From Kudoa neothunni (taxonomy: Eukaryota > Animalia > Cnidaria), in contig OZ199840.1 of assembly GCA_964304625.1 (NCBI GenBank), forward strand, positions 10,943,224 to 11,007,223: 64,000 nucleotides of DNA. The letters run 5' to 3'. Under the pieces are notes generated by a model. The model made no database searches and was not told where the DNA came from. It saw nothing but the letters and a program-made list of their open reading frames with translations. The translations under genes were made by a program, and so were the position numbers. Positions 990 to 32,372 of the stretch are shown here, in pieces. Each line of letters begins with the position of its first letter. Position 1 is the first letter of the stretch.

Positions 990-3942
990 ATGAAAAAATA
1001 CTCCTATTTTCTTTCCTTAATTTTTACATTCAACTGTAAGTATACTACAAACAATTTATAAATCTTATATCAATTTAGTAATAACGAAAGGAAACGTTTC
1101 AGAAAATGAACCTTCAAGAGAACTCAAATACGAATTTTTATATGGTAGAATTTTAACAAGACTAAATTTTTGGTTGGTTGGAAAAAATTACTCAGAAGAC
1201 AAAATGTGTCATTTAATGATTGAAAATGACATTAAGGATGGATATATGGAAATCAATGATTTTTCGGAAGACAATGAAGGAATTTCTGCGGAAAATATTA
1301 TGTACTGTGAAGAGGTAGAGATTGGTCTGCGTATCAGCGAACAAACAATAAGTAAAAAATATCTATTCGTAGAAGATGGAACGACAACAAGTGATATAAT
1401 GGCCCAAAACTCCGCTGTGAAAAAAACTATTTTTGGAATGCAAATACGTAATATATAACTACAGTGCAACTTCGGTCTTCGACCATAATCCGTTCTAGAC
1501 GTGTGTTCGAACTCTGAATCAATTTTTCCCAAGTAAAATAATGAAAGTTAATTTAATTCGTGCTACTCATCAAATAAATGACTATTTTTATTCTTATTCA
1601 TTAAAAAACAAGCATGCCTTGTGTTGATAAATATATAAAAAATAAACATTGAATTTAATAATGAAAATGAGATATACGATGTAACGCAAGCTCCGAATTG
1701 GGATTCGAATCTGCGTTATTGGCGTTAAAAAGCGGTGGGGCCATACCGCTCTCGATCGCGCTTATGATTGGTGGATTACAACTCTTGTAATCCACATGTT
1801 ACATGGGATAAAAATTTGTTGATCGTCATAAACTAAATTTTTAAGGTTTTATTTCGATGACGTTTGCATTATTTGATTGAGCTAATCTCCTTATAGAATT
1901 CCTTTTTATTTCGGTTTTTTGCTCCCACTTGAGTTGTTCTGAATACCCCTTCCTATGTATTCGAACTCAAGTGTTTTTGACTCAAAATTTTTGGTCAAAC
2001 TCCGAGGTTGCATCGTATTATAATATTTGAGCGATATTTTAAATTAATTTAGCATTAATAAAAAATCCCGAATTTAAAGTAGCTGTATCTGATTCTGGTT
2101 TGGTTTTCATACAAAAATTATGCCCTGCGGTCGCTTGCCATACCTATTATAATGGAATTTTATTTGACGTTGAAATAGAAAGTGGAGATTGTCAATCCGC
2201 TTCACTACATTACGTGGACAGTTATCATTGGATTCCTGAGTTGGAATTCAGATGCCCAATGTATCCATCTTTTTATTATGATATGACCAATAAATATATT
2301 CGTGAAACTATTGATATTTACAAGCCGCAATTTTATGTCAGCAGAAATAAAGATGAAGAATCGAATATATATTATCTAAATTTTACAAACAGTTTTCGTG
2401 GCGAAATTTGTAAATTTAGTATTAGAAAATATGTTAAGGGTTCATTTGCGGAGTATTCCTCGGTTTGCAAAATAGGAACAGATGAGTGTTTCGCTCCATG
2501 TGACAATGTTCGACTGATTTATGAAACGTCAGCATTAATTGTAGAAGTTCTGATTCAACAAAGGCATCACATAACAAATCCAACCATTATTGAGTATAAC
2601 GATGGTTATGTATATAAAAAGATGAGTAAATAAATTTTGGTGACTTTGTTTATATTGTGAACTAGTTGTAACAGAGGGGGTGAAAAAGGATGAGAAACTA
2701 GTTAGTTCTCTCACCAGTTCTACAGTTGGCTTAACTGTACCCCTATTCAAATCTACGGATCCTTACACTGAGTTCGAATCATGTGTGGTCTATTTTTATT
2801 ACGCGGATGAAATTAAGAATGCTACAAATACTGTCACTTGTGAGCAGGGATCCACTTGCGATCCTTATTGTAGTTCGTTACTAAATATACAAAATCTGAA
2901 TGAGGGGGCGTGCCATTATGTTTGAAATAAATATGCGAATTAATTCCACATTAAACTTCAATGAATATTTGTATATAACAACAAGTTAATACATTCTACG
3001 ATAATTTCAAATATTTTATATATACATAGAGCCAAATGAAGGCACAAAATTTTCCGAAGACCTTATACACGTCCAAGATGAAATGGTATCGATAATTGCA
3101 ATAGAGAGTAAAGTTTTCGATAAAGAAGACATTAAATGCGAATACTATTTGAGAAATACTGAATACGATAGTTTCTTCCCAGCGAAATGTGACGGATTTT
3201 CCACATGCAGAGGTTTTTGCGGGGAAAACAAAACCATCACCAATCTATCTCAAACGGCCGACTACGATATTAAAGTTGTAACGCAAAAGATGTATGGAAC
3301 AAAAATATATAAAAATATTAGGGAAGGTAAAATATAATTGAGATAGACATATGAATATAACTGTATAGAATCGGAGGTTAATAGTAATGATGAAAATAAT
3401 AAAATGGTTGTCAACTATACACGCGATGATGGCACCATCACTATTACCACAAAGTTCTCCTCTACTATTAACAATTATAAATGTCTATGGAAATTATATT
3501 CCATTTTTGGAAATACATCCACGTTAGTAAAAAGATGTATGTACATTGACGACGTTGATTGTGACATTATTCCACTATGCAAGGCTTTCACCATCGAAAA
3601 CGTAGATAATAACAAAAGATATGTTTTGCACGTTTTTATGTATGATAAACCAACCGTATGGGATCAAATTCAAATTACAGCAAGTATAATAATATTTTTT
3701 TATTGTTCAACTAATGATTGAACTATAAAGAAATATATGAATCCTCTACTTCCGGGTAATTTTATATTTTCTTGTTCAATAAGTTTACTAAATTTTAGAT
3801 ATAACATCATTATGTAATTTTTTTGTTTAATTATAATTTACTAATTGCTATAAATTAATTTAGAATTTCTGTAATCCTAGGTGCAGTAGGTATTATGATC
3901 ATATCACTAGGATTATATTTTGGATACCGGCAAAGAGAATAA
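990..3942 (+). CDS. Surface-protein family copy 1: type I membrane protein with Cys-rich FN3-like modules; lacks one module exon; one frameshift
   Basis: ATG 990 and signal peptide MKKYSYFLSLIFTFN|LITKG. GT-AG spliced exons cover ORFs 1174, 2100, 2680, 3083 and 3404. Motifs PQFYVS..YYLNFTNSF..EIC.F.IR and ITNLSQTADYDIKV are shared with copies 2-4. TM exon ISVILGAVGIMIISLGLYFGYRQRE* ends at 3942. A +1 frameshift lies near 2905-2915 (G run). Confidence 0.8.
1690..1761 (-). repeat. Degenerate tRNA-like sequence (possible SINE head or tRNA pseudogene) inside intron 2 of copy 1
   Basis: Minus strand is about 72 nt and GC-rich, with a B-box-like GATTCGAATCC and an A-box-like GAGAGCGGT. The cloverleaf is poor. 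Confidence 0.35.
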
Positions 3943-6509: not shown

Positions 6510-9421
6510 ATGTTCTTGTACATATTATTTCTCACATTATATTGTAGCGTTCTTGGCGAATGAATAAGAAAATATTTAGTATTGAACTGTGGATTTATTT
6601 TGGTGGTATTTAAAGATTAAAATACTAATTTATAATTTTAATCATTTTTTTAGGAATTCTCAGCTATTTTGCAGTTGATACGGAAAATTCTGTGTCCAGA
6701 ATTGTTCATTATGACATGAAAAGATACTCCACTACGGTTCTTAATTACAATAAAATTGGAAGAAAGTAAAGACAGTTCCAACAATGCTTTGCCATATAAT
6801 GAGAATAAATGGAATGCAACATAAGTTTATGGAAATAAGAAATTGCGTTGATACATCCTACGATCCTTCAAAAAAATGTATTATCCCATGTAACAATGCC
6901 AAAATACGATATGAATATAATGAAAAGTTCAAAAAAAACAATTATATCATGATTACAGAAGGAGATAATAGAAAAGATATTTTGAATTCTAATGGTGAAT
7001 ACATTAGAAAAGTCTACGGATTTCCAAGTTGTAATATGTAAGTTTCCATAGAGATTTTGATTATTGTTAGATAATTTAATCAATCCCTACTTCAAAATAT
7101 ATTAATGTTGGAAGTTATTTTTACTTTCGTGCAAGAACCTGCACCAAAGGTGGATGTCGTACGGGAAGAGTTGTTCAACAACAACTTCATTAACTCCACA
7201 TACGAATGTTATAATATTTTGTTCTCCAACCTAAAGCTTTACACATGGATACCGTATTTTGTAGTGAGATGTTGGCGATATCCCCCTTACTATTATTTTC
7301 TCCCCAATAAATTTATAAGGAATAATATAGAAAGTTATAAACTACAATTTTACGTTAGCAGAAATAGCAATACTGAATCGAAATACTACCTAAATTTTAC
7401 CAACTCATTTACTAACAGAATATGCCGTTTTAATATTAGAGACGGATCTATCGGCTCTAAATCAAAGTTTGTATCCAATTGTGGCTATCATATGATTATT
7501 GCTACGCCCCATGTGATAATGTGCAACTCATCTACACAACTAAAACATCGTATGTGGAAATAATGATTTTAGAAAGACACCACATTCTAAACAATAACGA
7601 TCGTAGTGGTAATGTAGGATATTTATATACTAAATTTGGTAAAGTACTTGCATAATCCCAGTTTAATATTACTTTATAGTTGCTATGGAACATTCAGATG
7701 AGGATGGAAGATTGATTTCTTCCATCCAAAGCACTGGGGTACGTTTGAATATGGCCCTTTTTGAGTCCTATCGTTTAGTCAGCCCAAATTATAAATGTTC
7801 TGTTAAATATTATGAGGCCGACGTTTTCAAAATAGTTGATTTAATAGGATCAGCATTCTGTGATTATGATGTTGAATGTGGCCATAATTGCGATCCTATA
7901 ATGAATATTCAACAATTAGCTGACAGTCACTCATATATGTTTATAATTAAAATAACGAGTAATGATGGTAACACTATATTTTCAGAGTCTCTTTTTATCA
8001 GAACATGTATTTATTTAATTTAGTTTGTATGTATGTATGTATGTATATAAATAAGAAATATATTTGTAGTACCCAAGGAAGGGCATCACTTTAACAAAAA
8101 TACACCTACTCCTCATAGCACAAGTATCTCCATCAAAGCAGAAAGTGGCGAATTGATAGAATCTGCTGAGGAAGTCACATGCAAATATTACATAAGAATT
8201 GTCGGAAGTCATCAGTTTTTTGCAGCAGTTTGCGAGGAAAATCGTGAGTGTAGAGGTTATTGTAAACAACCAAAAATTATAGTGAAACTTTCCCCTAAAA
8301 CCTCCTACGATATCAAGGTTGTTTCACATAGGTGGTATGGTTCAACAATATACCCAAATATTACAACAAGTAATGTTTTTCATATTATTCTATTCATCAT
8401 CAGCATAGAATCGTTGTTTATATCCACTTTCAAATATTTAAAAAATGGGTTTATCCTAAAAGGAAAGTTATATCCCTCCAACAAGAGGGCACGATGTCAC
8501 TATGTAGTAAATGTGCTCAACCAAACACAATGGGAACCGCTATACAGATGTCCCGGCCAATCTAATTTAATCGTCTATTCAAATTATGACAATAACGATC
8601 ATGAAGAAGCTTTTTTATCAAACTCTGTTTCAGTTTGTAGTAATACAGCTTTTTGTAATGAAATAAAATTCATGAATGACTACGATGAAAATAACACATA
8701 TAAAGTAATTGTTGCAATGGAAGAGGAATCCTTAATTAACTCGGTGATAATAAATCCAAGTAAAATAATTAAATTTATTATGGGCTTTATTTTCTTTGGA
8801 TATTTAATAGGGCCAAAACACTCAACAATGCTTAAACAAATCCTAATGAATTTGGAGCGTCAGGGTGACTCTATACTAGTGAAAACAAATTTTTCAGTCA
8901 ATGTCAAGAAAGATTCTCAATGCTTATGGGAATTAATTAGCATGGATCAATCCACACGTTCAACATTTTCACAATGTATGTTTAATAATGATGTTGGATG
9001 CATTTCTCCGCCAAAATGCGAAGAATTTTTGATCGAAGGAGTTAGTAGGAATGTCAGCTTCATTTTAAGGTTGTATCTGAGTACCGACTATTTAATTTGG
9101 GGAGATAGTGAAATGATTCCAAGTAAAATATGACCCATTAATTAACATTTACATTGTTTATAATAGGATCTATGGAGACGATAGAGGTGGATGAAGGAAA
9201 TAATAAAGTCAGTTCTGGGTAATTGTTTAGTGTTCCAATTAGATGTACTAATTTTTCTTTAGTGTTATTAAATACATGTATTCTGTTTATGGTTGTAATA
9301 CTTAATTTTATAATCATAATATAGGATTTCTGGGTTATTCGTCTCCGTATTCATTATAATTGCGGGGGTTTACATGCATTTCAAATATTGGGGACAGATG
9401 AACAATACTTTGACCAACTAA
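6510..9421 (+). pseudogene. Surface-protein family copy 2, with several frameshifts
   Basis: Signal peptide MFLYILFLTLY at 6510. Exons are collinear with copy 3 (ORFs 6784, 7105, 7685, 8153). Frameshifts against copy 3 lie near 6740-6780, 7100-7180 and 7487. TM exon MISGLFVSVFIIIAGVYMHFKYWGQMNNTLTN* ends at 9421. Confidence 0.75.
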
Positions 9422-10775: not shown

Positions 10776-10841
10776 GTCACCTTTAATTTCACACTCTTGC
10801 TTGCGTAATAATTTCAGAAAAATATTGACATTTAATAATGA

Positions 10842-11972: not shown

Positions 11973-14900
11973 TTAAGTTGCGTTTAAAAAAGCCAGTTAA
12001 GTATATATTAATTTTAAAAAAATAATTAAAACAAAAAAGCCATTTATCAGCAATCTATGAGATACTCCCATTGTTGCTATCGATAGAATAAGACAGTTTC
12101 GTCTACATTGTGAATAAAATTTTCAGAGAATATTTTAAAAAATATTCTGATTTAATTAATCCACTCTGAAATAGTTTCAGCCGTAGCATCAGCAGGCTGA
12201 TTAATAAAATTCGATTTTTAAATTTTTGACCTTTTTTTAAAACAGCGAAACTCACCACGAATTGCACATAAAGGTAAACCTTTTTCTTTGATTAATTAAT
12301 TTCTCTTAACGATCATCACGACGACGCCTAATACAATCTTTTTGTTCCGTGCCCACTCAATCTACCCATATACATCGTTGTCAACAGAATGCAATTGTCT
12401 GCATATAAATAATTTCTATTTTTATATTCTAAAAACATGTATAGGTTTTGATTATTTTATTTTTCATCTCTAGGATGCCATTAGTAGTCGAGATAATAGA
12501 TATTTTAAAACGTGATACAGTGGCAGTTTTTGGGTTATTAGATTGGAGACTTTCATAATAATAAGTAATATTGTATTTTTAGGCAATAGGTATAGTTATA
12601 GGAGTTTGTCGGCATAAAATATTGACTTAACTAAATAAGAAACAAGAAATACTTTAAATTGGCCAATTACGTGACGTTAGTTACATTATTTCTCAACTTT
12701 TTAAAATAATTTTTTTAAAAATTTTGATTGAAACATTATAAGAAGCATATTATATAAACGATAACCAATCAATATTCTAACTAAATAGGTTATTAAAAAG
12801 TGCGTGAGATTGATTACTTATTGTATAATTATCTGCATGTTATCTCGCTATATAATTTAATGCGAAGTAAATTAAGAAAAACATAATAGCTTCAATCATG
12901 CATAGAGTTCCTTGGTGGAAAATGAATTGAAAAACCATACAGAAAAATTTGATATTTCTTTAGAAATAAATTTTTCTATATTAAGCGTTATTAACATTTT
13001 AGCTTCTAATTCACTTTTGATTATTTTAAATCTACTAATTTATCAATACTTACTAAATATTATTCCTTCTCGACCGATTTCACACGGTTTTAATAAAGAA
13101 TAATTGTTTGCGTATTATATCAGTACTTTATGTACGCTAATTTTAATATTTTAATGCGATATCAGATGATGGATAGACAATTAGTGGTGACTAAGGTCAA
13201 ATTAATTCTTTATTACCCCCCTAATGGATTTGGGATAGAAATCTACCTCAATTAGACTTTGTTTAGTGTATAATTCGTTACTTATAATTTAAAACTTTCT
13301 GAGATTATTATTATCTCTTCAACATAATTTTATCTACATACTAAAAAAAAATAAAAATTTTTATCTATCGCATTGGCGGAAAAATACATTTCCCACCCTC
13401 CGATAGACTTTGGGGGTGGAAAATTACCCCACAATTTTTTCATCTAAAATTAAAGAAGAAATAATTTTTAAGATAAATGATGAGTTATAGGATTTTCTAT
13501 AATCTAGATTTTACGGTATATCGCATACAAATTGTAAATAGATCACGTGATTCAGTTGAAAACGTTTTTAAATGGTGTTTATTGGAGTCTGTTCTTGAGA
13601 TAGTGGTGAAATTATTATATGGTTTTTTAATGGAGCGAATAATTGCAAGTAAATCATGGATATTCTTTAATCTTTATTCCAAGAATATGTGTTAAAAAAT
13701 TAACGTTGTGTGCGCAATTTTCAATAAATATTGGTGTTCTAACCACCTAATAAATGTTTGTAAGTCTTGTTTGCATTAAATGCGGTTTATTCATGACACA
13801 AAAAAAAGCTAAGGAATTATGTAGATTAATATTTTAATTTCAGAAGCTTTAATTAGAACAAATATCGTCAATCCAACTCGGGATTAAAAACTAATACGAC
13901 GGTTGTTGGCGAAAATGATATTCGTAGGAATGTCGGGATTATTGACGAATTTTTTGCGCTATAACTCTTTATTCTTTTGTTTCACCCATCGAAATATTCA
14001 ATATTTCTTCTTACGGAATTATTTTGTAACAAACGATAAAATATAAATCCGGAGGTAATTTTCTATCTCAGAGTCAATAGTCAATTGGAGGCAGTCGATT
14101 TTCGGTCTATTAGAAGAAGAGATTTCAAACGCGACTAAATTGTAGTATTTTTAATTTATATATATATATATATATATTGTAATTCATTTAAATAAGATTC
14201 TTAGTTAAAGACTTTTTAGTTAATATTAAAATTTGTCTAAATAATAACTCTCATTAAAATTAGGCAGATACGTGCCGCGGTAAATTTAGTTTTGAAAAGT
14301 ATGTTGTAACACGCACTGGAAATTTTTAATCTACGAAACTCTTATAAGCTATATGTATGTCGATTTAATGCTTCAGATTCTGGTATATTTAATTATTTGT
14401 GGTCCTAAGAGCGAAGGGGAGATCAAAAATATTAAAATTTGGATAGAGTTTATTTGCATGACGAATTTTAATGCTTAACCACATGTATATATTAACGCAC
14501 GCGCAAAAGAAATTTTAATCTTAGTATCTCTTACTTACAAACTATGTAAAAAAAATTTTTTAAACTGTGCTAAATTTAATTTTTTCGGACCACCACATCG
14601 TTTTTAGGAGCCAGAAAAAATTAAATATTATCAAAACTAACGACGCTTGATCACTATTTACAATGTCAATTGTCAATTCCATAAATTACATACATGTTGA
14701 TTTCATAATCATATTTTAATCTTTAGATATAAAATAGATGTAGAAACATTATTTTTTTTTTACTGTTAGAAAAATAAACAAAACTTCCTATTAATAATTA
14801 AAAAATATTTTGGTAGAACAATTACGTTATTTAAAATTTAATTTTGTTTCTTAATTACTCTGTGAATTTATCCGAACATATAATTTAAAATGCTATTAAT

Positions 14901-15316
14901 CCAATAATATATTTTAGAATGTATTCGAATGATTATTTTAGAAGAAGTTTTGCCAAAATTAGTTTACGCCAGTCTATGTGTAATATTTCTAAAATATTAT
15001 TACTCGTGTTTTATGTTCGCATATCATCGTCGGACATTTCCGATTAGATAAAAGTATAAATAAGCGTCGGAATAAAAAACTATTTGGTTTTTTACATTTT
15101 TATAATATTAAAAATTAATACTTTCTTCGAAGTATTGTGAAATATTTTAAAACATTAAAATGAATATTAAAAATAAATATCATCATATCCAACTTGGATA
15201 AACTTAAATTTATCTGTGATATATACTTTATATGCCTTTTAATCATAAATTCTCGGTGAAATTAATTTATTATCCGATAAATATACATTTTTGTTGGTGT
15301 AAAATTATTGTAGATA

Positions 15317-18194
15317 AGTTTTGGTGTAAATATTTTCTGAAGCCATTATTTTCGGAAACGTTATATTGAATGAATAAAAAAAAATATATTTTTCAACTCT
15401 TGATATATTGTTGGGGTATATCAATATTAAATCAATATTTTTTAAATATACTTTGAAATAAGGATTGATCAACTATTCTATTTCGGCCGAAAATTTCTCC
15501 AATAGTAGAACTGTGTTGTATGATGTGAGAAGAAACCTAAATAAAGTCCAAATTATAATAAATATGGAAGGTACTGAATATGATCCAAAACGAAGCTGTC
15601 ATGTAATGAAAATCAATGCTATGAGATCAAGTTTTGTGGAGATAGATCAATGCGATAAAAATGTAAAGACTTCCAACGATAAATGTATCGTCCCATGTAA
15701 AAATGCATCATGGAGATATAAACACAGAGAAGATCATAAAAGACTCAATTATATAACAATAAAAGACGAACCTAATCTTGATGACGTTAGCGATACCAGT
15801 CGAGTAAGCGTCAAAAAAGTCTATGGATTTCCCATAGGTAAATTGTAAATAATTATAAATATTTTTATTTTTATATAGCTATATTAGTTAATCCAAAAGT
15901 CGTGATTGTGAAATTTTCAACTCATTACTATTTCCATGTAAGTACATGCACAAAAGATGGATGTCGCGTTCGCGGCATTATACATTATAAACAGAACGAT
16001 TCAAAATACGATTGCTACAACACTTTTGTCGACAATATAGATTTCCATATTTGGGTGCCATTTTTTGTAGTGAATTGTTCTCTATATCCTCCCTACTATT
16101 ATTATGTGCCAAATAAAAATTTGAGAAACAAAATCGAGGTTTTCCAACCTCAATTTTATGTCAGCAGAAATAAAGATACTGAAACGAAATACTACCTAAA
16201 TTTTACCAACTCATTTCCCAACGAAATTTGTCGGTTTAGTATCAGAGATGGATCGATTGAGCCTAAATCGATGTTTGTGTCTAATTGTGGGCAATCAAAT
16301 GATTTTTGCTACGCCCCCTGTGATAGTGTACAACTTACCTTAGCAACTATAACCCCGCACGTGGAAATATTGATCCAAGAAAGACACCATATATTAGGCG
16401 AGAATGAGGGATATTTTTATTTTAAATTTGGTAAATTTTTATTTAAATTCATTTTAATAGTATCCTATAGTTGCCATTGAACATTCAGATGAGAATGGAA
16501 GATTAATTTCATCCATTAAAAGCACCAAGATTCGCTTGAATGCGGCCCTATTTGACAAATATAGTCTATTCAGCTCAAATAATAATAGATGTTCAGTTAG
16601 ATATTATCGTGCGGATGTTCTTAAAACATTCGACATATCCAGACCAGCAATTTGTGGGTATCGTATATCTTGCGGCGAAAATTGCGAACCGAATATGACT
16701 ATTCAAAAACTTGATGAGGGTAGTCCCTATATTTTTATAATAAGAATAACAGGAAATAATTATAAAACATTATTTTTGGAAACGTTGCTGATTAAAACAT
16801 GTAATTTGTTTTCGATAATTTAAAAATTTTACCTTATTATAGTGCCAAAAACGGGTGATAACTTGAACAAAAACAGACCTACTCCTCGTAGCACCAGTAT
16901 CTCCATTAAAGCTGAAAATGGTGATTTAACCAATTCTGGCGAGGAATTTACCTGCAAATATTACATAAGAGTTGTTGGAGATCGTCCGTTTTTACCAGCA
17001 GATTGTGAGGATATTAATGAGTGTAGAGATTATTGTAAAAAAAACAAGACCATAGTTAATCTTCTACCCAAAACCTCCTACGATATCAAGGTTGTTTTTC
17101 ATAAGTTGTACGGTTCAATGATACACGAAAATATTACTACTTGTAAATTATTTTTCGTTATTCTTTATATTTTTGTATAGACTCGTTATTGATATTATCT
17201 TATAAATATTTGGAGAATGGTTTTGTTGTAATCGGGGAGTTAAATCCCTCCAATTCAAATGCACGTTGTCATTATGTAGTAAATGTATTCAATGTGACAC
17301 ATTGGAATCCAGTATACTACTGTCCTAATAAATCTATTAACTTAATAGTTGATTCAAATTCTGGTAATATCGACCATGAGAAAGGTTTTTTAACGGACTC
17401 CGTTCCCGTATGTAATAATGTGGCTTTTTGTAATGAAATTAAATTCACGGATGGTTATGACGAAAATAACAAATATAAAGTAATAGTTGGGATAGAGGGA
17501 GAATCTGTCATTGGTTCGGTGATAATTAATCCAAGTAATATAAATTGAGTATAATTATATTTTTTATTTTACCTGAAATAGGGGAAAAAACTTCAACTCA
17601 ACCTGGAAAAATAATAGTGTGGTTGGAACGTAACAAAAGTTCATTAATAGTTAGAACAGAATTTACAGCTAGTGTAAAGAATGATTCCAAATGCTTATGG
17701 GAATTATTTCATGGGGATTATCCATCATCATCACCATCAATATTTTCTAAATGTATGTTCGATCACGATGTTGGATGCATTTCTCCACCAAAGTGCAAGA
17801 TGTTTGTAATTAAAGAAGTTGGTGAGCTTGGCAACTATATTTTAAAATTGTACTTGAATGAAAACCAAGCGACTTGGGGAGAAGCTGAAATTAAGCCAGG
17901 TGAAATTTTTGATATTTTACATAATAAAGAGTTATATAGAATTGAACGTGGAAAAAGAGGTAGAGGTAGAGGAAGAGAATAACAAGGTCACTTCTGTGTA
18001 ATTATGTACAATTTTATGGAGATTATAATAATATTTGTTTAGTCTTATCAAATTAATGTACATTAAGTTTATTTTTTGGAATAACATTATTTTATTACTT
18101 TAGGGTCACTGGAATTATTATTTCTTCTTTAATTATTATCTTGATCATTTTTGTATATTTCAAATTTTGGGAGGAAAATGAAATGGCACCATAA
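15317..18194 (+). CDS. Surface-protein family copy 3 (exons 2-10 appear in frame; first exon and start codon unresolved)
   Basis: ORFs 15465, 15902, 16536, 16842, 17189 and 17545 join through phase-1 GT-AG introns. Then come an acidic linker exon, the micro-exon 18043-18057, and TM exon MVTGIIISSLIIILIIFVYFKFWEENEMAP*. The region aligned to the copy-2 ATG reads AAG. Confidence 0.8.
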
Positions 18195-18634
18195 AATTTC
18201 GCATTTTCATTAACTTAGTTATGCATTATATTAGTAATTTTTCTTTTTTAGTTTTAGTTTCTTGTAAAAGTCAATTTTTGTGCTTCACATCCAAAATAGA
18301 TGTAAATAAGAATAAATAATTAATCTTTCTCATTATTATCAAGTTCATTAATTATTTTATTTTCAAAAAGTTATAATATATATATATAAATTATTAAACG
18401 AATATTCGAATTTCATTTTTTTGAATAATCTTAAATTGAGCACTTTTCAACGAATTGGTCACATTTAGATCGTGTTTTATATTTAATTAATTTATTTATT
18501 TATTTAAAGAGATAATTTCTATTTATTGTATAAACTTAGGGTGAATATTTTAAATGGTTTCCTAATGTATTGTACATTTAATTTTCACACGCGCACATAC
18601 ACATGAGTAATGTGTATTTAATAGAGTGACTTAT

Positions 18635-19274
18635 GGGTCGTGTGCAATCAAACTTATTAAGCGCGAGTCATAATTCCGCACCACACAAAACTTCGCGCAT
18701 ACGCGAACAAACAAAAATGTAAAAAAAATAAATATTCGAGTATATTTTGACCAATTGGTATGATAATTTAATTTAATATTTAATTCAACATGATTTATAA
18801 TTTGAAAATTCACTAAAAAATGTAATATGCGAAATGTATAATCTTTTTGTAAACCCCCAATCTATGTAGTAGATACAAGTATTGATTGTGAGGCACCACA
18901 AGGAATTCATTAGCTTCACTGATAAAAACTCACTGAGAATCTTCTATTTGATTTCTCTCATTCGTTAAATCCGCTCTTTCATTTGTAGATCAATATTCAC
19001 ATTTTCTCCTTTGAGAGTTTTTCTTAATTTGGAACATAACAATCGTCATAATGTTAAAATAACTAGTCCGTATGTTTATAATAGTATTCAAGGCAGTTCT
19101 TATTTTTACATCAAAGATCTTCATTGTTTTAAATTTAGCGTTTGATTTATTCATTACTTTTTTTTAATATTTTATAATTTCTAATTTTTGGTTAAAGTCG
19201 AAATTTTTTTATTATCAAAAGACGCACAATTTTGTTTCGTCGTAGTGATGAAAAAAAATCATTGCGCACGACAC
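18635..19274. mobile_element. Putative MITE (possibly MULE-like)
   Basis: Imperfect TIRs GGGTCGTGTGCAATCA / TCATTGCGCACGACAC. No clear TSD. Confidence 0.4.
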
Positions 19275-20662
19275 ATGAAATGCATAAAAACTACTCACAA
19301 TGTATTATATATAAAGTCGAATAGAAGTAATATGTTTCAAATATTATAAAGTTTATAGAGTGTAAGTTAAAATTGTTAAAAGTTGAATAATTTAGGTACT
19401 ATTGCAATATTACGTTCGACACATTATTGCCAAGAACCATAAATTACTGTATCATTTAATTCATATTAATATTGCTCTTTTTATTTTTTATAAATAGCTT
19501 TCATTAAAAATTATTCTTCAAAAATTAACAGCTACTAAACTTTTCCTACAATTTTCAAATGAAATAAAGTTTGACGATTGATTATATTGTCAAAATAAAA
19601 TTAGTATAACTTTCTTTATAATTCAAATAAATAAACGAAAAAAATATATAAACTAAAATAAGTGTTTATTGATCGTAGGTATTATTTTAAAAGACTAAAA
19701 GGTGACATATCAAAAAAATAGTGAAGATAATTTAAAATAATATGTGTAGAATTTATTTAAATCGCTAAGTCGTATAACATGGAAGTCAAACATTACTAAA
19801 AATGTTATTAAGGAGTATGATTAATTTAGAAGTTAGTATTCGGACAATCAAGTGGGTTTTAATCGGTTATTGGAAATTTAATGAAGACTTCACATGCGTC
19901 GGCGGTGTTGTATTTGGGATTCTGTAACAAAATTAGATGTTATCATAATTAGCTGAATTCTTCCTAAAGATCAGTGTTTCCCACCGGTGGGTCCTACAAA
20001 TTTTTGAATGTTTAATGAATGGCTTTTGTAGGACGTGGAAAATTCTGACCATTGATGTGACATGGATAATGGTGAGATAATTGGGGGCAGTGTGGCGCAC
20101 ACTAAAATAATTACTTCGATTTTGATCTTGTTTATTTTTAAGCAAATTTGAATATCCTAAAATAATACAAAAGCACTGATTAATTTATATAAAAACGTAT
20201 TACATGGTTTTTGCTCAATAGAACGGGAATGGTTATATTTCCAATGTTGTCATCTTTAAAATCGTGACCCCCTCTTTTGACTTATCCAAAAACAATATTG
20301 ATTAATTTTCAATATTAATTATTTAATTTCAGTTTATAAACCCCGAATACAGAAATATTTTGCTGGATGTGGGGTGGATTACCAGAAGTTTCACTTAACG
20401 CGATTTTGACTGAATAAAGAAATAAAAATGTTAATTTTTAGAGTCCATCTATAAATTAAATTAGATCTGATCGAATACATTTTAATCCTAATAAAAAAAA
20501 ATAAATATTAGTCATTTTCTAATTTTAATGTGGCATGAAGCTTGGTTCAAAATTATAACGAGTTTAATTTAATAAATATAATATATTTGAAAAAGTTGGC
20601 GATGCTCTTCCAAAACGTGTAGAAAGGAAACTTCACTTCTTTAGTCAACGTTTTTCAATAAT

Positions 20663-21321
20663 ATGAAAATAAAACTTCATAATTTCTTGGAGTTGGCGTA
20701 TTGTTGGCTTGAGGTTGTGAGAAGCGCTAACTTTGTTACAATTACGGGGCACTCTTCTCAAACAATTACTAACTATTATCACTATCTTTGCCAGCTTGTA
20801 ACGGACAGTCTGGGCTCTGAAAACGCAGTTATTGGATGGGAAAAAATAATTGTTGAGATTGATGAACCCATGTTTAATAACGTAGAGCATAACAGAGGAC
20901 ATGGCATTAATGGAGCATGGATTCTTGGAGGTGTAGAATGGACACCATAACGAAAGATGTTTTCAATAGAGGTTCCTGACAAACCGCCAAGACTCTTATC
21001 AAAAAAATTAAAACATACCTTCACCCTGGCTCCATTATCATGACTGACTGCTTCAAAAGTTATGGGAAACTCCCTAATTTCTGTGCTTATCACACTATAA
21101 ATTACAGTATAGAATATGTAGATAGTACCACGGGTGCTCGTACAAACATTATTGAGAAAACGTGGGTTGCCATCAAATACAAAATATCACCAAGGAACAG
21201 AACTGCCTCAGTAAATGAAGATGGTTTTATCAGTATGGATGGATTTAATGCATTTCTTGGCGAATTTCAATGGAGACGACAAAATAACCCTGATTTGTGG
21301 ACTGGCTTTTTATCCTTATAA
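20663..21321 (+). pseudogene. Merlin (IS1595/ISXO2-like DDE) transposase relic
   Basis: Motifs EIDE..HNRGH..WILGGVE, PGSIIMTDCFKSY..L, HTINYS..YVDSTTGARTNIIEKTW and FLGEFQWRR, interrupted by a stop and a frameshift. Degenerate inverted ends near 20370 and 21580. Confidence 0.85.
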
Positions 21322-23031: not shown

Positions 23032-24519
23032 ATGGAGAGTATAACCAAAGACAAGTTTGACTCTTCTATTCCAAAAAGTACTTCTGTTATAATTTTCATG
23101 GTAATTGAATGTTAGTGACCACTGCTGAAATAAATGTGGGATATAAGCCGAAGGATAATAATAAGAGTTCTCGAAAGAGATTTTATATAGTTATAGCAAT
23201 TGTGGTGGCAGTTGTGTTTTTGAGTCTGATGGCTGTTGCAATCCATTTTTTGATGCATCGTAAGAAAATACACAAAGATTTAATTACTTTGCCGACCATC
23301 GGATATTTGTTCATTGCCGACCTGAATAATTACCCCACTGAAAGAAAGTGTGAAGAAATGGATACGGATGATTTTGACGTTCTTTTTGAAAATTTTATCT
23401 CCAAAAAAAACATTGGGGTGCAAACATTTGCACTTATTTGCAAAAATATGCTTACATCCAATGGAATAATCATTGGCATCAGAAAACCGCTTACAGAATT
23501 TTTAGAAAAGGCCAATAGTCATGGCATATCCATTGGAATTATTATTCTACCATCCCAACTGAGACAAGAAGAACTTGTCAACAGCATTGAAAGGATCCCA
23601 TTTTTGTCTTTCTATATTTATTATAAGCAGAAAAATGAAATCGATAATGCTGCAATAAAAAACTTTGCTGACACTATAAACGAAAAATTATACTATACAT
23701 TGAAAAGATCTATAAATTTGATTCTTGAACTAGATAATTATGGGGAGGTTGAAGAAATAAAATCAATATTTGAATTCATTGATGGTGTGGTAATGCCAGT
23801 TGATTTGTTTGACGCGGAAAACATTTATGTATATCCAGAGTCAGTAACACTGATACTTATCCCAAGTAATTCAATTCTTAATTGTTTGGGCTACTGCTAG
23901 GTATTTAGGAAGGTTAAAAATCGATGAAAATGGAATCCTCCACCAAAGTCCTACTCCGACAGATATGAAGATGTATTTAATTTCAAGATGTAATTTTCTT
24001 TCGAATGCTTCCGCATTCACTAATGAAGATTTCTTTACTGGAGACGAATTTACGCGATACTTATCTCTTTTTCCAAATTTGGACACCAATGTGTTATCGT
24101 TCCACAGTTTCGTTAATGACTTTATTAATTTGAGAAGTAGAAATGATATTTGGAAGAAGATAAAACATGCACTCACCACGACAGATTACCTAAGCAATAC
24201 TAAACTAGCTTTGTCTTTTACAATTGAAATACCCTCTGATATTGACAGTGATTTCACTCACCTTGTGCTTGTTCAAAATATGAACTCACACAATAATGTT
24301 GTGGATTTTAGTTTGGATTTGTTCGGTTTTATCCCAGGGTTGAAAGCCCAAGTGCTCATTAGTTACCCACGTTATAATTCACTGGAAGAAAAAATTATCA
24401 TAAATACAAACAATTTTCAATTAATAGGAGGTGGTTCAATTGTTCTTGCCGTGTACAAAGTTGATAACGCTCGAACACTAAGCGGTGTTCTTGATGCATG
24501 GCCACCTAGCCGACCTTAA
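23032..24519 (+). CDS. Orphan type II membrane protein, 3 exons
   Basis: ATG 23032 (MESITKDKFD..). Introns at about 23078-23115 and 23840-23900 join ORFs 23109 and 23965 in frame. Basic RKR precedes TM helix FYIVIAIVVAVVFLSLMAVAIHFLM, followed by an ectodomain of about 400 aa. Confidence 0.75.
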
Positions 24520-25290: not shown

Positions 25291-25326
<36 letters not shown>

Positions 25327-26960: not shown

Positions 26961-27827
26961 CAATATAACCTATAATACATTCTTGATTACAATATAGTTA
27001 CGCAGCTCCGAAATAATAAACAAATTATTTATATAGTCATATAAGGTGAGACTTCGACGTTTTTTATTTAATTTAATTGCTGAAAGGTTAGTTTACGGAT
27101 GGCCTCAACTGAATCCATGGTCATAGTCAGAATATTGAAGGCTTTAATTTACCTATTTTTAATATACACTACCAAATCATCATTAAAAATTTTCAAAATG
27201 TACTTATTTAGTAAAATATGTTTAAACTCCTTCTATAAGGAATGTGTTTGCACATATCTTATAAAAACACACCTAATTTATGTAGGCACTGACTATTGGA
27301 ACGGACGGGAATATCTCTTAAAACAACGCTTGTATCAGAATTTTAATTTTGTAAATACATGTAACAATAAATGAACTACTAATAAATATATCAGTTGACA
27401 TTTTACCTCTAGTTTTACCAATTATGCATGGATTAAGTTGTAAATTTCTTAAAAAAATTATAAATGACGTTGAAATTACTGAGAGTGAGGGCGCGTGCTA
27501 AAAATACTCTAATGCGTTCCATTTCGTTTCTGTCAATTTTATCTTTGTTTCTTGATCAAAGATGGGGAAAAATATTAATAATATTTTTCTCAGTTAACTT
27601 TATTATTAGAATTGATATAACTATTTTAAGATCAAATAATTGTGATTTTTAACTATTATCAATGATTAATTCTACCGGCCCCCAAAAACCTTTCTTTGAG
27701 TACCAAATTTCACCTAACTCTTAATATAAATACAGAATATAATATTAAACTAAAATATAAAGTTTATATGTATTAAATTATCATAGAATTAAATGAGTTA
27801 AAAATTTACATTTGAGTATATATTTAA

Positions 27828-28868: not shown

Positions 28869-29564
28869 TTAAGCATATTTATCACCTTAATTCGGTAGAT
28901 AATGAAGCTTCAAAGATTTATCTGATCATTTTTTATTTGACTAATGATAATTATATTTTAAGTTATTTAATCGGACATTACTTTTAACAGAAAGAAATAG
29001 ATCATCGTAATGTGAGATTGAATTGAAATAATAGATATTTTTTAAACAAAATAAATTATTTTTAAGATTTACTTAAAGCTAATTATATAATAAAATTTAA
29101 TGTAAAAATTAATTTTAATATAAATCCCGCCAATGTTTATATTTGATCTATAATACTCATAAATTTAAACGTTTCTTCTATGAATCAACTTTATAGCATT
29201 TATCAATAAAATTTATGATTAGCCAATATTACGAAAATTTATAATGATAAAAGTTCGGTTGAAAAGTTTAAGTCGCATAAAATTTTTTTAAATATTTATA
29301 TTAAAAATATACATAAGGATGACGAAAATATGTTTAAAAATAATCATTATTCAACTAATTGAATTAAAGTTCTAGATAATTAAATTATAATTCGTAGAAG
29401 CTTTAAATCCAAAAATAATCTCTACTAAAAATTTGAAATAGGATTTATCTTTCAAATGAATTATTTTTATCACATAACATAACTTGGTTGACGTTTAAAG
29501 ATATCCAATCGATTTAGTTTTGGTGCTCTGTTTACCGTGAAAACTCAAAATCCTTAATGTGGTA

Positions 29565-32372
29565 ATGAAAGCAAAAGTGGTTTATGCCGTACTAATTGTG
29601 ACGCTATTTTGTAATTTCCATTCATTGTTATTTATATTACCATAGTATTTATACTCGACAAGGGACAAAAACCTTGCTCTCCTCTTCAAAATCCATCGAA
29701 ATCCTATATAACAAATTGAAGGATGATGCGTTCCATGATATATACGTAAATGGAAATGATCATTATCAAAATAAAATATGTCACATAATGAAATTCAACG
29801 CGGACAAGCTTAAATTTGGGGATATTAAAAATTGTAATAGCCATTCCAGTATTTCGAAGAAAAAGTGTCTTGTTCTGTGTAGAAATAATTCGTTGAAGTT
29901 TTTATATGAAATTAACAATATAAATAACTTTTTTAAATTAAAAATTGAAACAAAAAAGAACTCATCTAATGACCCAATGCAAATAATGAAGCCTAAAATC
30001 TTTGGATTTCCAATTCGTAAGATGATTATTGTGAGTGGAACTGATTTTTGTTAGCCATATTGAAAGTTGTAAATATAAAGGTAAACGTATATGAGAAAAC
30101 TTTACTGTTAACCACCAATACTTGTCCCTCAGTGTTATGCCTTGTTTATAATGAATACTTCAAGCTAGCTGAAGGCGATCAGCGTCTTGGTTGTTATGAA
30201 CGTGTATTCTATTTTGTTGACATTTCTCACTTAATCTCCTATATTAAACTACAATGCTATCAGTACCCTCCGTTTTATTACTATGAATCAAATCAATATT
30301 TAATCAGACATAATGAAATTAACAAACCCCAGTTTTATGTTACTAAAAGAAATAATGATATGAGTAGTTATTACCTTAATTTTACGAACTCATTCCCTTC
30401 CGAAATTTGCTTCTTTGCTATCCGAGAGGGAAGAGATGGAACATATTCTGATTTTATATCAAAATGTGGTCACATAAATAATGAATGCTATGCACCATGT
30501 AACAATGTTCAACTGAGCTACGATCCGGATGTTCCAATAGTGGAAATAGTAATACTAAAAATGAAACCATGGCTACCTAAAAATATTAAAAATAGCAATT
30601 TTGATAAATATCATTACAAAAAGTTTGGTAAATAAATTGATTTTTTCACTAGATAATAAAAATTTTTTAGTTATCAATGATTTTCGGGGAAAGGGAACAT
30701 TGATTCAGTCAATCAGAAGTACCGGTGTTATTTTGAATGCACCATTATTTAAATTGTCACACAATTCGGTTTCTTTTGATCAATGTAATGTTAAATATTA
30801 TGATGCCGATGGTTTCTTTACGAAATATTCGATTGCTGTTGCAAGGTGTGGTGGCGAAATTAATTGTGACTACAGCTGCAGTTCCCCTTTGAACATTAGT
30901 AATCTAAACGAAGGAACTTCATATATATTCGAAATTGCACCTAATAATTTGAATAATTACAAAAATTTTAAAGAATTAATACTAATTAAAACAAGTAGAA
31001 CTATTGCTTAAGTAACTGCTTAATGTAACTTTATAGGACCAAAGAAGGACATTTATCTGTCTGAAGGTAATTTAACTGTAACAGACACATCCATATCAAT
31101 TAAGGCAGAGGATGGGGTTCTCATGAACAATTACGAAATAATATGCAGATATTATATTAGCACTTCCGGTAGGAATGCCTTTGTTTTAGCAACCTGTGAA
31201 GATGGCCGTTATTGTAGAGGATATTGTAAAGAAACCAAAACAATTACTAAACTTAGTCCCAATACGACATATGACGTTAAAATAATCCCACAAAAAGTAT
31301 ATGCCCCAATGATATTGAAAAAAATAAAAACAAGTATAGTTAGTTATTTGTATGATTATTAAATAACTCAATAGAGCCATCATTAAAGTTTAATTACGAA
31401 TACACATTAAATGGATTTATCACTTGGGGAAACTTGCACCTAAACAGCACTATGAGAAGTTCTTGTCATTACATAATAAATGTTAAGAAAAATAAACAAT
31501 GGACACCACTCATTAGATGCCCGAATAATAATAACTATCTGATGAATTTTATATCTTCAACGAGCGTTTACAAATCAAAAAACACATCGCTATCACCTTT
31601 TCTAAAATCCTCATGCAAGAAAATACCTCTTTGTAATCGTATTGAATTCAATGCTAAATACGACGATAAGAATGAGTATCAAGTAATAGCTATGGCAGAG
31701 GGAATGTCTGGAATAGGTTCTGTGATTGTTTACCCTAGTAAATTTATTAATTATTTTAAATATATTGTTACATCAAATAATTTAATATTTGTATTAAATA
31801 GAACCAATAAAAAAGACACCAGATGGTCAAATTGGTTTAGATATAAATCTTGATGGAAACCAATTAAAGGTCACAACCGAATACAATGAGACAGTAATGG
31901 ATATACCCAAATGTCAGTGGAAACTAATCGTTTTTAAACAAAACACCGTTCATATATTGAAACAATGTATGATCGATAATGATAATGGCTGCGAAAAAGT
32001 TCCAGATTGCAATCAGCTTACAATAGAAAAAGTCGACTATCCCACATGTACTATTTTACGAGTTTATGTCAAAAACTCTCCTTTAACCTGGAGCGATATC
32101 AACATTGCAAAATGTGAGTATTATATTTATTATTTGACTCTAATATAAATAAATCATAGGTACAACAACAAGAAAATCACAGTGAATAAAAACCTAGAAA
32201 AATTTTTTATTTAATTATATTTTAGAATTAAAAATTCAATGTAAATTAATAATTAATTACATTTAATTTTTCGTTTAGGGTGGTTGTAGGCCTAATTTTA
32301 ATTGTATCGGTCTCTGGAGGGATTGGTTTTGGCTATGTGTATCGGAAAATTTCACGCCTACGCCCAAAATAA
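29565..32372 (+). CDS. Surface-protein family copy 4 (10 exons; one apparent 1-nt A-run frameshift near 29670)
   Basis: Signal peptide MKAKVVYAVLIVTLF. ORFs 29674, 30048, 30601, 31123, 31434 and 31897 join through phase-1 introns. FN3-like motifs LNISNLNEGTSYIFEI and ITKLSPNTTYDVKI. Micro-exon 32226-32240. TM exon MVVVGLILIVSVSGGIGFGYVYRKISRLRPK*. Confidence 0.85.

What the first reader, a model, noticed from the sequence alone, without database searches (positions are those of the whole stretch)
990..32372. Tandem array of four divergent Cys-rich FN3-like single-pass surface-protein genes: candidate undescribed variant-antigen or receptor family
Seen: four co-oriented paralogues share one exon plan. 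It runs signal peptide, 5-6 module exons each with C..C/CxxxC clusters, linker, 15-nt exon, TM, then a tail of only about 4-12 aa. Cysteines and cores such as YP.(F/Y)YY..N, QFYV and YYLNFTNSF...IC.F.IR are conserved while the intervening residues differ strongly. Known: motifs such as I.NL.P.T.Y.IKV resemble the fibronectin type III tyrosine-corner strand, but classical FN3 domains are usually Cys-poor. Inference: a lineage-specific, diversifying family of disulfide-stapled FN3-like surface proteins with little signalling tail, set among transposons. This resembles a parasite host-interaction or antigenic-variation locus and is the best candidate here for a novel system.
Basis: partly seen in the sequence, partly recalled or inferred. 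Interest (0 to 1): 0.88.

Follow-up and report, generated by a model that had tools for sequence, protein, structure and literature searches.

The report
Giant FN3 surface-protein family in Kudoa
The four neighbouring genes are real. They belong to an unannotated family of at least about 220 genes in a fish-muscle parasite (the genome matches Kudoa neothunni), each encoding a membrane-anchored chain of seven fibronectin-III-like domains with a diverse outer half, which makes it a likely host-facing surface family.

Summary
Position 990 is the ATG of copy 1 and 32372 is the stop of copy 4. All four co-oriented genes share one plan: signal-peptide exon, module exons E1-E6 (copy 1 lacks E5) split by 38-64 nt phase-1 introns, mini-exons, a TM exon and a 4-12 aa tail.

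This is not a four-gene oddity. The genome holds 222 hits to one family motif against 12 in the control, and 451 first-look candidates for exon E2. All 40 sampled loci have the same module order.

AlphaFold models (pLDDT 81-83) match FN3 arrays and cytokine-receptor ectodomains; exon E2 holds two sandwiches, giving seven per protein. 28 cysteines are conserved.

The genes are under purifying selection (dN/dS 0.25-0.47). In array neighbours, synonymous divergence is about 4-fold higher in the distal modules (12 of 12 pairs), which points to gene conversion of the membrane-proximal half.

The signature domain finds only 21 unnamed fragments among 1.84 billion proteins.

The genome matches Kudoa neothunni (Myxozoa). 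Other first-stage notes on this genome flagged what looks like the same family elsewhere; none was followed up.

Expression could not be tested, and antigenic variation is unproven. Copies 1 and 2 each carry a one-base frameshift.

The parts
990..3942 (+). Copy 1. Five-module variant: signal-peptide exon 990-1035, E1 ~1078-1446, a ~600 nt gap, E2 ~2055-2625, E3 ~2666-2990 with a one-base frameshift at a G-run near 2903-2922, E4 ~3032-3326, no E5, E6 ~3369-3682, linker exon 3731-3755, 15-nt exon 3799-3813, TM exon 3864-3942 (tail RQRE).
6510..9421 (+). Copy 2. Possible ATG at 6510 (uncertain), truncated E1 6769-7026, E2 ~7099-7637 with a one-base deletion near 7463, E3 7682-8005, E4 8072-8368, E5 8411-8758 and E6 8813-9121 (one open frame through two in-frame introns), TM exon ~9325-9421 (12-aa tail). 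Probably a pseudogene, or it carries assembly errors.
15370..18194 (+). Copy 3, which looks intact. Signal-peptide exon 15370-15415, E1 15462-15837, E2 15879-16430, E3 16471-16800, E4 16843-17142, E5 17181-17534, E6 17582-17899, unresolved mini-exons in 17900-18103, TM exon 18104-18194 (tail KFWEENEMAP).
   Evidence: DNA contigs of run X1 agree with 0 differences.
29565..32372 (+). Copy 4, which looks intact. Signal-peptide exon 29565-~29610, E1 ~29646-30016, E2 30055-30627, E3 30671-30994, E4 31037-31333, E5 31375-31737, E6 31802-~32112, TM exon ending at the stop codon 32370-32372 (tail RKISRLRPK).
15879..16430 (+). Family signature exon E2 (copy 3). It encodes two tandem beta-sandwiches with 8 conserved Cys, the YP.FYY..N / PQ.YV / FTN...EIC.F cores and the CYAPC motif. 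In 33 of 43 copies the FTN core reads as an N-glycosylation sequon.
16843..17142 (+). Exon E4 (copy 3), the clearest FN3 module. It has 4 conserved Cys and the L.P.T.Y.IKVV tyrosine-corner strand.

Best explanation
The four genes belong to a very large multigene family restricted to one parasite lineage. The genome matches the myxozoan Kudoa neothunni, a cnidarian parasite living in tuna muscle.

What each gene encodes: a type I membrane glycoprotein made of a signal peptide, seven disulfide-stapled FN3-like beta-sandwich domains carried on six phase-1 exons (E1; E2, which holds two sandwiches; E3-E6), a short stalk from two mini-exons, one TM helix ending in a G.YFGY-like motif, and a basic tail of 3-12 residues that cannot signal on its own.

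How the family behaves: the genes sit in co-oriented tandem arrays, several of them near chromosome ends. They are kept under purifying selection. Array neighbours appear to homogenise the membrane-proximal half (E4-E6 and TM) by gene conversion, while the membrane-distal half (E1-E3) stays several-fold more divergent.

Most likely role (inferred, not shown): a parasite-surface binding or coat family whose outer half is kept diverse for interaction with the host. This resembles the contingency gene families of other parasites. Whether only a few copies are expressed at a time is unknown.
For: Shown:
- Exon plan and phase-1 introns.
- Identical E1-E6 order in all 40 sampled loci.
- TM exon and short basic tail across loci.
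- Family size: 451 candidates and 150 scored matches for E2; 222 CYAPC-motif hits against 12 in the control; 263 candidates for E6, with 148 of the 150 scored free of stops.
- FN3 fold of E4-E6: model pLDDT 82.7; Foldseek top hits are contactin, titin and Tie2 FN3 triplets at E = 3e-8, with 366 hits at E <= 1e-3.
- Fold of E1 and E2: model pLDDT 81.4; matches to IL-17RC, IFNAR1 and gp130 by Foldseek, and to LepR and neogenin FN3 domains by VIA-align; E2 splits into two sandwiches at model residues 160-248 and 249-343.
- Sequence-level FN3 signal: 22 of 114 modules hit Pfam fn3 (best E = 1.2e-5), and all 24 PDB profile hits are FN3 proteins or FN3-derived monobodies.
- 28 conserved Cys, distributed 4, 8, 4, 4, 4, 4 across E1-E6.
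- Purifying selection: dN/dS 0.25-0.47 per module; 0.20-0.55 for window copies 2 versus 3.
- dS gradient: distal median 0.39 against proximal 0.09 in 12 of 12 independent close pairs, Wilcoxon p = 0.0005. The ratio is 2.4-9.5 for array neighbours but 1.1-1.2 for the two pairs lying far apart.
- Lineage restriction: only 21 hits among 1.84 billion proteins; the ten looked up are unnamed Logan/ENA singletons.
- The same architecture occurs in a relative with 17% GC.
- Genome identity: three chromosomes plus a mitochondrial genome, GC about 30%, introns of about 40-50 nt, and (TAAACC)n at a single chromosome end, as reported in PMC12239612.
Against: - There is no expression evidence at all. The three RNA runs with the host's species label gave no reads on copy 3, and they do not demonstrably contain the parasite.
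- No whole module has dN/dS above 1. Local windows only reach about 1, so diversity could come from relaxed constraint rather than selection for novelty.
- Two of the four window copies carry frameshifts.
- The window copies are long-branch outliers of the family.
- Surface location, glycosylation and disulfides are inferred from sequence only.
- The structure models rest on alignments of paralogues only, and their inputs contained translated in-frame introns as linkers.
- The organism's identity is inferred from genome statistics and a paper, not from a sequence match.
Confidence: 0.6

Rival explanations
1. This is a true antigenic-variation system. One or a few of the 200+ genes are expressed at a time and switched, and segmental gene conversion creates new mosaics, so the parasite evades fish antibody responses.
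For: - Large family in tandem and chromosome-end arrays.
- Variable distal and constant proximal halves, with conversion-like mosaic dS.
- Scattered frameshifted copies, as in other contingency families.
- A conserved TM with a tiny basic tail recalls Giardia VSPs.
- A preprint on another myxozoan argues for variant surface families and subtelomeric contingency genes.
Against: - No expression data.
- dN/dS is well below 1 in every module.
- From general knowledge, not tested here: Kudoa plasmodia grow inside muscle fibres, where exposure to antibody is limited.
- Many arrays are not subtelomeric.
Confidence: 0.22
2. This is a self-recognition or cell-cell adhesion family used among the parasite's own cells (cell-within-cell development, sporogenesis, fusion or rejection between co-infecting clones). 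That would be analogous to the Hydractinia allorecognition Ig genes or to Dscam and clustered protocadherins.
For: - The organism is a cnidarian, and cnidarians use tandem arrays of variable type I Ig-fold proteins for allorecognition. This comes from the reference trail in PMC11792419; I did not read the primary paper.
- The FN3 arrays resemble adhesion molecules such as contactin and Dscam.
- Diversity is concentrated in the distal domains.
Against: - The tails have no signalling motif.
- More than 200 copies is far more than known allorecognition complexes hold.
- There is no evidence of allelic hypervariability, since only one genome was available.
Confidence: 0.12
3. These are ligand-binding chains of a receptor system, like cytokine or IL-17 receptors, that signal through a shared co-receptor.
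For: The best fold matches for E1-E2 are the IL-17RC, IFNAR1, gp130, LepR and IL-6R ectodomains. E2 aligns as a two-sandwich module with cytokine-receptor homology modules.
Against: - The matches are weak (Foldseek E about 5e-4; Z of 6-7, which is in the range of common arrangements) and generic for FN3.
- No WSxWS motif in any of the 251 modules checked.
- A 3-12 aa tail leaves no room for Box1 or SEFIR.
- Hundreds of copies is atypical for receptors of this kind.
Confidence: 0.04
4. These are not functional genes. They would be a decaying repeat or pseudogene family that merely looks like genes.
For: - Two of the four window copies have frameshifts.
- The published annotation lists 45.6% repeats and only 5,316 proteins, so the family may have been masked as repeats (inference).
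- There are no transcripts yet.
Against: - dN/dS is 0.25-0.47 in all modules, including the window copies.
- 148 of the 150 scored E6 matches are free of stops.
- Splice sites, intron phases, 28 cysteines and the TM exon are conserved across 40 loci and in a relative with very different base composition.
Confidence: 0.02

Closest known systems
Giardia variant-specific surface proteins (VSPs)
   Same: A large parasite family of type I membrane proteins with a disulfide-bonded ectodomain, a conserved TM segment and a cytoplasmic tail of only a few basic residues. They are candidates for a surface coat. (From general knowledge and the description read.)
   Different: - VSP ectodomains are CXXC-rich with more than 10% Cys. 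Here Cys is 3-4%, CXXC is almost absent and the domains are FN3-like.
- There is no sequence relationship.
- The genes here have 8-9 short introns.
- One-at-a-time expression is shown for Giardia and untested here.
FN3 arrays of animal adhesion molecules and receptors (contactins, Dscam, titin, Tie2, class I/II cytokine receptors, IL-17RC)
   Same: Tandem seven-strand FN3 sandwiches, the tyrosine-corner motif L.P.T.Y.V.V, phase-1 exon-per-domain structure, and a type I topology. These are the best fold matches.
   Different: - Every module carries two extra conserved disulfide pairs.
- There are no Ig domains, no WSxWS motif and no kinase, phosphatase, SEFIR or Box motifs.
- The tail is 3-12 aa.
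- Most modules fall below Pfam's fn3 threshold.
- There are hundreds of paralogues instead of a few genes.
Hydractinia allorecognition complex (Alr) immunoglobulin-superfamily genes
   Same: A cnidarian tandem cluster of type I proteins with beta-sandwich ectodomains. The most distal domain is the most variable.
   Different: - Those have Ig-like rather than FN3-like domains, a few dozen genes in one complex, and longer tails with signalling motifs.
- That organism is a free-living colonial animal.
- The comparison rests on general knowledge and on a citation seen, not on a test here.
Candidate surface-variation families reported in the myxozoan Sphaerospora molnari (VSP-like, RIFIN/STEVOR-like, ETRAMP-like; bioRxiv 10.64898/2026.02.11.705288)
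   Same: Lineage-specific, duplicated membrane-protein families in a myxozoan, proposed to act in immune evasion. That preprint also points to contingency genes in subtelomeric regions.
   Different: - Those families have 10-27 genes and other architectures, and are claimed to come from protists by lateral transfer.
- The family here is FN3-based, about ten times larger, and built like animal genes with phase-1 module exons.
Subtelomeric contingency families of Plasmodium and Trypanosoma (var, rif, VSG)
   Same: Hundreds of copies, arrays near chromosome ends, pseudogenes among intact copies, and mosaic evolution through ectopic recombination or gene conversion, with a conserved membrane-proximal part.
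   Different: The folds are unrelated. Here many arrays are chromosome-internal. Switching and exposure to host immunity are not shown.

Membership tests
Fibronectin type III domain (Pfam PF00041, E-set clan) | A beta-sandwich of about 90-100 aa with seven strands, superposable on solved FN3 domains. | tested here: met
   E4-E6 model, pLDDT 82.7: Foldseek top hits are contactin, titin, Tie2 and fibronectin FN3 triplets at E = 3e-8 and probability 1.0. E1 and both halves of E2 match FN3 domains of IFNAR1, LepR, gp130 and neogenin at Z of 5.5-6.6.
Fibronectin type III domain (Pfam PF00041, E-set clan) | A sequence match to the Pfam fn3 profile above its gathering score (25 bits). | tested here: inconclusive
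   The one module scored directly falls below the threshold: copy 3 E4 gives 12.5 bits, E = 0.17. 22 of 114 modules match at E <= 0.1, the best at 1.2e-5. A stacked module profile hits fibronectin 1fnf at 1.3e-4, and all 24 PDB hits are FN3 proteins or FN3-derived monobodies.
Fibronectin type III domain (Pfam PF00041, E-set clan) | The tyrosine-corner and E-F strand motif (L.P.T.Y.v.V). | tested here: met
   The E4 consensus reads IIxLxPxTxYDIKVVA. Equivalent Y..V motifs occur in E3, E5 and E6.
Giardia-type variant-specific surface proteins | More than 10% cysteine with many CXXC motifs in the ectodomain. | tested here: not met
   Cys is 2.8-4.3% per module, and CXXC occurs 0-0.2 times per module.
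Giardia-type variant-specific surface proteins | A type I topology with a conserved TM and a very short conserved basic C-terminal tail. | tested here: met
   The TM exon reads R-I-I...G.GFYFGY followed by tails such as WKNKN, KKKN or RKK in most loci. This is an analogy in architecture only.
Class I cytokine receptors | A WSXWS motif in the membrane-proximal FN3 domain of the homology module, and Box1/Box2 motifs in the tail. | tested here: not met
   No WS.WS in any of the 251 module sequences checked. The tails are 3-12 aa.
IL-17 receptor family | A cytoplasmic SEFIR domain. | tested here: not met
   The cytoplasmic tail is 3-12 aa. The ectodomain similarity to IL-17RC is weak (Foldseek E = 4.6e-4, TM 0.26).
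Parasite contingency (variant surface) gene families, a functional class | A large paralogous family in arrays, with evidence of recombination or gene conversion among members. | tested here: met
   At least about 220 copies. dS is higher in distal than proximal modules in 12 of 12 close pairs, and the effect is largely confined to array neighbours.
Parasite contingency (variant surface) gene families, a functional class | Expression at the parasite surface, with variant or mutually exclusive expression. | not testable with these tools
   The only RNA runs on offer gave no parasite reads. The published assembly paper also reports that very few RNA reads mapped.

The most novel reading that the evidence does not exclude
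Kudoa, an animal reduced to a few cells, runs a programmed surface-variation system built from animal FN3 modules. More than 200 genes act as donors and expression sites. Gene conversion keeps a constant membrane-proximal stalk and shuffles diverse distal domains, and only a few copies are displayed at a time. That would make it an independent, metazoan invention of the strategy known from Giardia, trypanosomes and Plasmodium.
Probability: 0.2. Interest if true: 0.85.

Novelty: new variant of a known kind. Interest (0 to 1): 0.62.

Why it matters
Myxozoans are widespread fish parasites whose genomes are full of uncharacterised, fast-evolving genes. How they deal with host tissue and host immunity is largely unknown.

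The published annotation of this genome lists only 5,316 proteins and 45.6% repeats. A family of 200-450 genes of about 3 kb each would therefore be its largest gene family, and it has apparently gone unrecorded: no named or full-length relative exists among 1.84 billion public protein representatives.

Recognising the family does three things. It gives a concrete candidate for the host-facing surface of Kudoa. It provides a set of profiles for re-annotating myxozoan genomes. And it offers a testable case of concerted evolution of the constant half combined with diversification of the distal half in an animal parasite.

Tried and rejected
- **Pfam on single exons:** nothing significant.
- **The search for homologous proteins with E2:** no hits, but its length filter excludes full-length kin, so this says little.
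- **Nematode identity (Strongyloides-like):** considered because of n = 3 and a 40 Mb genome. Rejected: no cuticle-collagen domain and only 3 nuclear receptors. Acceptor sites read ..ATAG rather than nematode-like TTTCAG; the nematode consensus is from my own knowledge.
- **Orthonectid identity:** literature searches led nowhere.
- **Sphaerospora molnari:** rejected because its assembly has 40 contigs and a 14.0 kb mitochondrial genome, against 4 contigs and 18.2 kb here.
- **Three-module alignment A3:** MAFFT stacked E4, E5 and E6 on top of one another. It was useless for structure prediction but was reused as a pan-module profile. A4, built with multi-module anchor rows, was used instead.
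- **A second batch of 20 family loci:** All family statistics therefore rest on 40 loci, which I chose mostly among E2 matches without stops. The sample is biased towards intact copies.
- **RNA test:** runs X10-X12 laid no reads on window 13000-18900 that bear on expression. This is no verdict, because the parasite is not shown to be in those runs.
- **E2 profile against PDB sequences:** no hit.
- **'Fused' exons:** open frames spanning two or three modules are not intron losses. They are in-frame, stop-free introns with normal GT..AG ends.
- **Spliced proteins:** Every search used single exons or natural open frames by reference. The tree and the dN/dS work were done module by module.

Full report
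**1. The observation**

The window is AT-rich (GC about 0.29).

Splice-site analysis shows GTAA..(A/T)AG introns of 38-64 nt at homologous positions, all in phase 1. In copy 3 the exons are:

| Exon | Coordinates |
|---|---|
| Signal peptide | 15370-15415 |
| E1 | 15462-15837 |
| E2 | 15879-16430 |
| E3 | 16471-16800 |
| E4 | 16843-17142 |
| E5 | 17181-17534 |
| E6 | 17582-17899 |
| TM | 18104-18194 |

990 is the ATG of copy 1, and 32370-32372 is the stop codon of copy 4. The linker exon (3731-3755), the 15-nt exon (3799-3813) and the TM exon (3864-3942) of copy 1 were read directly. The tails are 4, 12, 10 and 9 residues.

- Copy 1 has no E5 module and carries a one-base frameshift in E3 at a G-run.
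- Copy 2 has a one-base deletion in E2 at a G-run, and a truncated E1.
- Cysteine makes up only 3-4% of the modules.

Run X1 holds DNA contigs that agree with copy 3 without a single difference, at about 5-6x depth. That run is probably the source sample, so it is not independent support.

**2. Size and layout of the family**

| Query against the window's own genome | Result |
|---|---|
| Exon E2 of copy 3 | 451 first-look candidates; 150 scored, all E < 1e-28 |
| Degenerate DNA pattern for the nearly invariant CYAPC motif | 222 hits, 12 for the reversed control |
| Exon E6 | 263 candidates; 148 of the 150 scored have no stop |

I fetched 40 loci. Module profiles built in the sandbox find E1-E6 in the same order in every one. 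A TM exon follows, of the type R-I-I...G.GFYFGY, with tails such as WKNKN, KKKN or RKK.

The window lies at C3:10.943-11.007 Mb of an 11.05 Mb chromosome, so the finding is 73-104 kb from the end. Two more co-oriented copies lie just upstream, at 10.932 and 10.940 Mb. Other dense arrays sit at C3 0.04-0.17 Mb, C3 9.75-9.86 Mb, C1 16.3-16.9 Mb of 17.15 Mb, and C2 9.8-9.87 Mb. Further arrays, such as C2 7-8.6 Mb, are chromosome-internal.

An E2 tree shows local arrays as clades. It also shows clades that mix chromosomes. The window copies, together with the copy at 10.93 Mb, are long-branch outliers of the family.

**3. Fold**

Every query was a single exon or a natural open frame given by reference.

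Some open frames run through introns that happen to be in frame and free of stops; their GT..AG ends are intact. Two such frames served as AlphaFold inputs, so each input contained short translated-intron linkers. These linkers came out as low-confidence segments or as a spurious helix.

*Signal peptide + E1 + E2 of locus L010.* The model used 73 rows and reached pLDDT 81.4.
- Foldseek matches IL-17RC, IFNAR1, gp130 and myomesin weakly, at E about 5e-4.
- The Foldseek-independent aligner shows three sandwiches: E1 at model residues 26-148, and two in E2 at 160-248 and 249-343. Each is similar to FN3 or Ig-like domains at Z of 5.5-7. The E2 pair aligns with cytokine-receptor homology modules.
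- Z values in this range are common, so I take them as fold class only.

*E4-E6 of window copy 2.* The model used 88 rows and reached pLDDT 82.7.
- It matches FN3 triplets of contactins, titin, Tie2 and fibronectin at E = 3e-8, with 366 hits at E <= 1e-3.

*Sequence-level evidence.*
- 22 of 114 single modules hit Pfam fn3, the best at 1.2e-5.
- A stacked module profile hits only FN3 proteins or FN3-derived monobodies in the PDB, the best being fibronectin at 1.3e-4.
- E3 and E4 are mutually detectable, and E5 and E6 weakly so.
- Every module has four conserved cysteines and E2 has eight, giving 28 in all.

The protein is therefore a chain of seven disulfide-stapled FN3-like domains on a TM anchor.

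**4. Selection and recombination**

I computed Nei-Gojobori estimates module by module.
- Pairs with dS of 0.05-1.2 give a median dN/dS of 0.25 (E2) to 0.47 (E3).
- Window copies 2 and 3 give 0.20-0.55. These are coding sequences under constraint, not decaying repeats.
- Sliding windows reach pN/pS of about 1 only in a loop of E2, in parts of E3, and in the indel-rich centre of E5.

The strongest signal lies in the synonymous sites.
- In 12 of 12 non-overlapping close pairs, dS is higher in E1-E3 (median 0.39) than in E4-E6 (median 0.09); Wilcoxon p = 0.0005.
- The ratio is 2.4-9.5 for neighbours in one array. It is only 1.1-1.2 for the two pairs that lie on different chromosomes or 7 Mb apart.

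The simplest explanation is gene conversion that homogenises the membrane-proximal half among neighbours, while the distal half stays diverse.

**5. Relatives and annotation status**

A profile of 43 E2 sequences was run against 1.84 billion protein representatives. It found 21 hits, all fragments of 101-479 aa.
- The ten I looked up are unnamed singletons from Logan or ENA assemblies.
- The six contigs I fetched are AT-rich, at 17-35% GC.
- One 4.6 kb contig, at 17% GC, holds a complete gene with E1-E6, a Ser/Thr/Pro-rich linker and a TM exon ending in KKK.
- Another contig carries a family member next to SNF5 and ribosomal protein S14 genes.
- Two hits are intron-free ORFs spanning several modules.

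The family therefore exists in at least one related organism and has no named or full-length public record.

**6. The organism**

- The genome has three nuclear contigs of 17.15, 12.04 and 11.05 Mb, plus an 18.2 kb mitochondrial contig that reads TGA as Trp.
- It encodes nuclear-receptor zinc fingers, so it is an animal. It has no nematode cuticle collagen.
- A preprint pointed to a chromosome-scale Kudoa neothunni assembly obtained as a by-product of host sequencing.
- The source paper (PMC12239612) reports three chromosome scaffolds, a circular mitochondrial genome, 30.4% GC, a median intron of 49 bp, and a (TAAACC)n telomere at one chromosome end.
- I find that repeat only at the right end of C2.

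The identification is an inference, but a strong one. The same paper lists 5,316 proteins predicted from protein hints and 45.6% repeats, reports almost no mapped RNA, and does not mention fibronectin, surface proteins or expanded families. It is therefore plausible, though not checked here, that this family was masked or missed.

**7. Function**

*Shown:* the gene architecture, the fold class, the size of the family, purifying selection, and the dS gradient.

*Inferred:* surface location (from the signal peptide, the TM helix, the conserved N-x-T sequon and the paired cysteines); inability to signal alone (from the tail length); and a role in binding something variable or external (from the diverse distal half).

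My best reading is a host-facing surface binding or coat family of the contingency type.

True antigenic variation, self-recognition between parasite cells, and co-receptor signalling remain rivals. Expression could not be tested: the RNA runs gave no reads bearing on copy 3 and do not demonstrably contain the parasite.

**8. Earlier notes of this scan**

Other first-stage notes on the same genome describe what appears to be the same family at other places on C3. My locus L012 lies inside the span of s1-682508 and has the family architecture. None of the notes had been followed up. I tested their 'variable tip, constant base' idea independently on my own loci (see section 4).

**9. Verdict**

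The functional claim of antigenic variation is still open.

The kind of thing is known: an expanded parasite surface family built from FN3 arrays. This particular family, its scale in a reduced animal genome, and its pattern of concerted evolution appear to be unrecorded.

Noticed in passing
window 20645-21318 (+): Two adjacent open frames lie between copies 3 and 4. The second matches the IS1595/ISXO2-like DDE transposase domain (PF12762, E = 2.4e-9), so this is a remnant of a Merlin-type DNA transposon. It is the only recognisable transposon I found inside the finding.
   Followed up: partly
window 23109-24516 (+): Two long open frames (263 and 221 aa) start with an ATG, a basic stretch and one TM helix (IVIAIVVAVVFLSLMAVAIHFL). 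They look like a type II membrane protein of about 480 aa with no significant Pfam match. It is unrelated to the FN3 family.
   Followed up: no
G000:C4 (18,219 bases; loci L003, L004): The mitochondrial contig has 44% GC against about 30% in the nucleus. Its cox1 holds 8 in-frame TGA codons. ARAGORN's tRNA calls are few and mostly implausible, which fits the tRNA-poor, fast-evolving mitochondrial genomes reported for myxozoans.
   Followed up: partly
loci L005-L044 and window 8051-9130: At 32 module junctions among the 40 loci and the window, the intron is a multiple of three and free of stops, so two or three modules read as one open frame even though the GT..AG ends are intact. By my rough estimate this is somewhat more than chance. 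[quoted passage not shown]
   Followed up: partly
L045 (Logan SRR33849685 contig, 63-1502) and L047 (Logan SRR31175926 contig, 233-1429): Divergent relatives of the family occur as intron-free ORFs of 479 and 398 aa that span several modules. The contigs have 23-25% GC. So some relatives have lost the module introns, or these contigs derive from spliced RNA.
   Followed up: partly
G000:C1:10296485-10306767 (-): The only three nuclear-receptor zinc-finger (zf-C4) matches in the genome lie within 10 kb of each other. Two of them have identical scores, which suggests a recent tandem duplication.
   Followed up: no
window 37327-37945 and 44065-44606: These are long low-complexity tracts that read as poly-Leu, poly-Ile, poly-Asn or poly-Tyr in several frames (trinucleotide-type repeats). 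They lie outside the finding.
   Followed up: no
window 2903-2922 and near 7463: Both frameshifts in copies 1 and 2 sit in short G-runs. The assembly was built from HiFi reads at about 7x coverage according to its paper. They could therefore be consensus errors rather than real pseudogenising mutations.
   Followed up: partly
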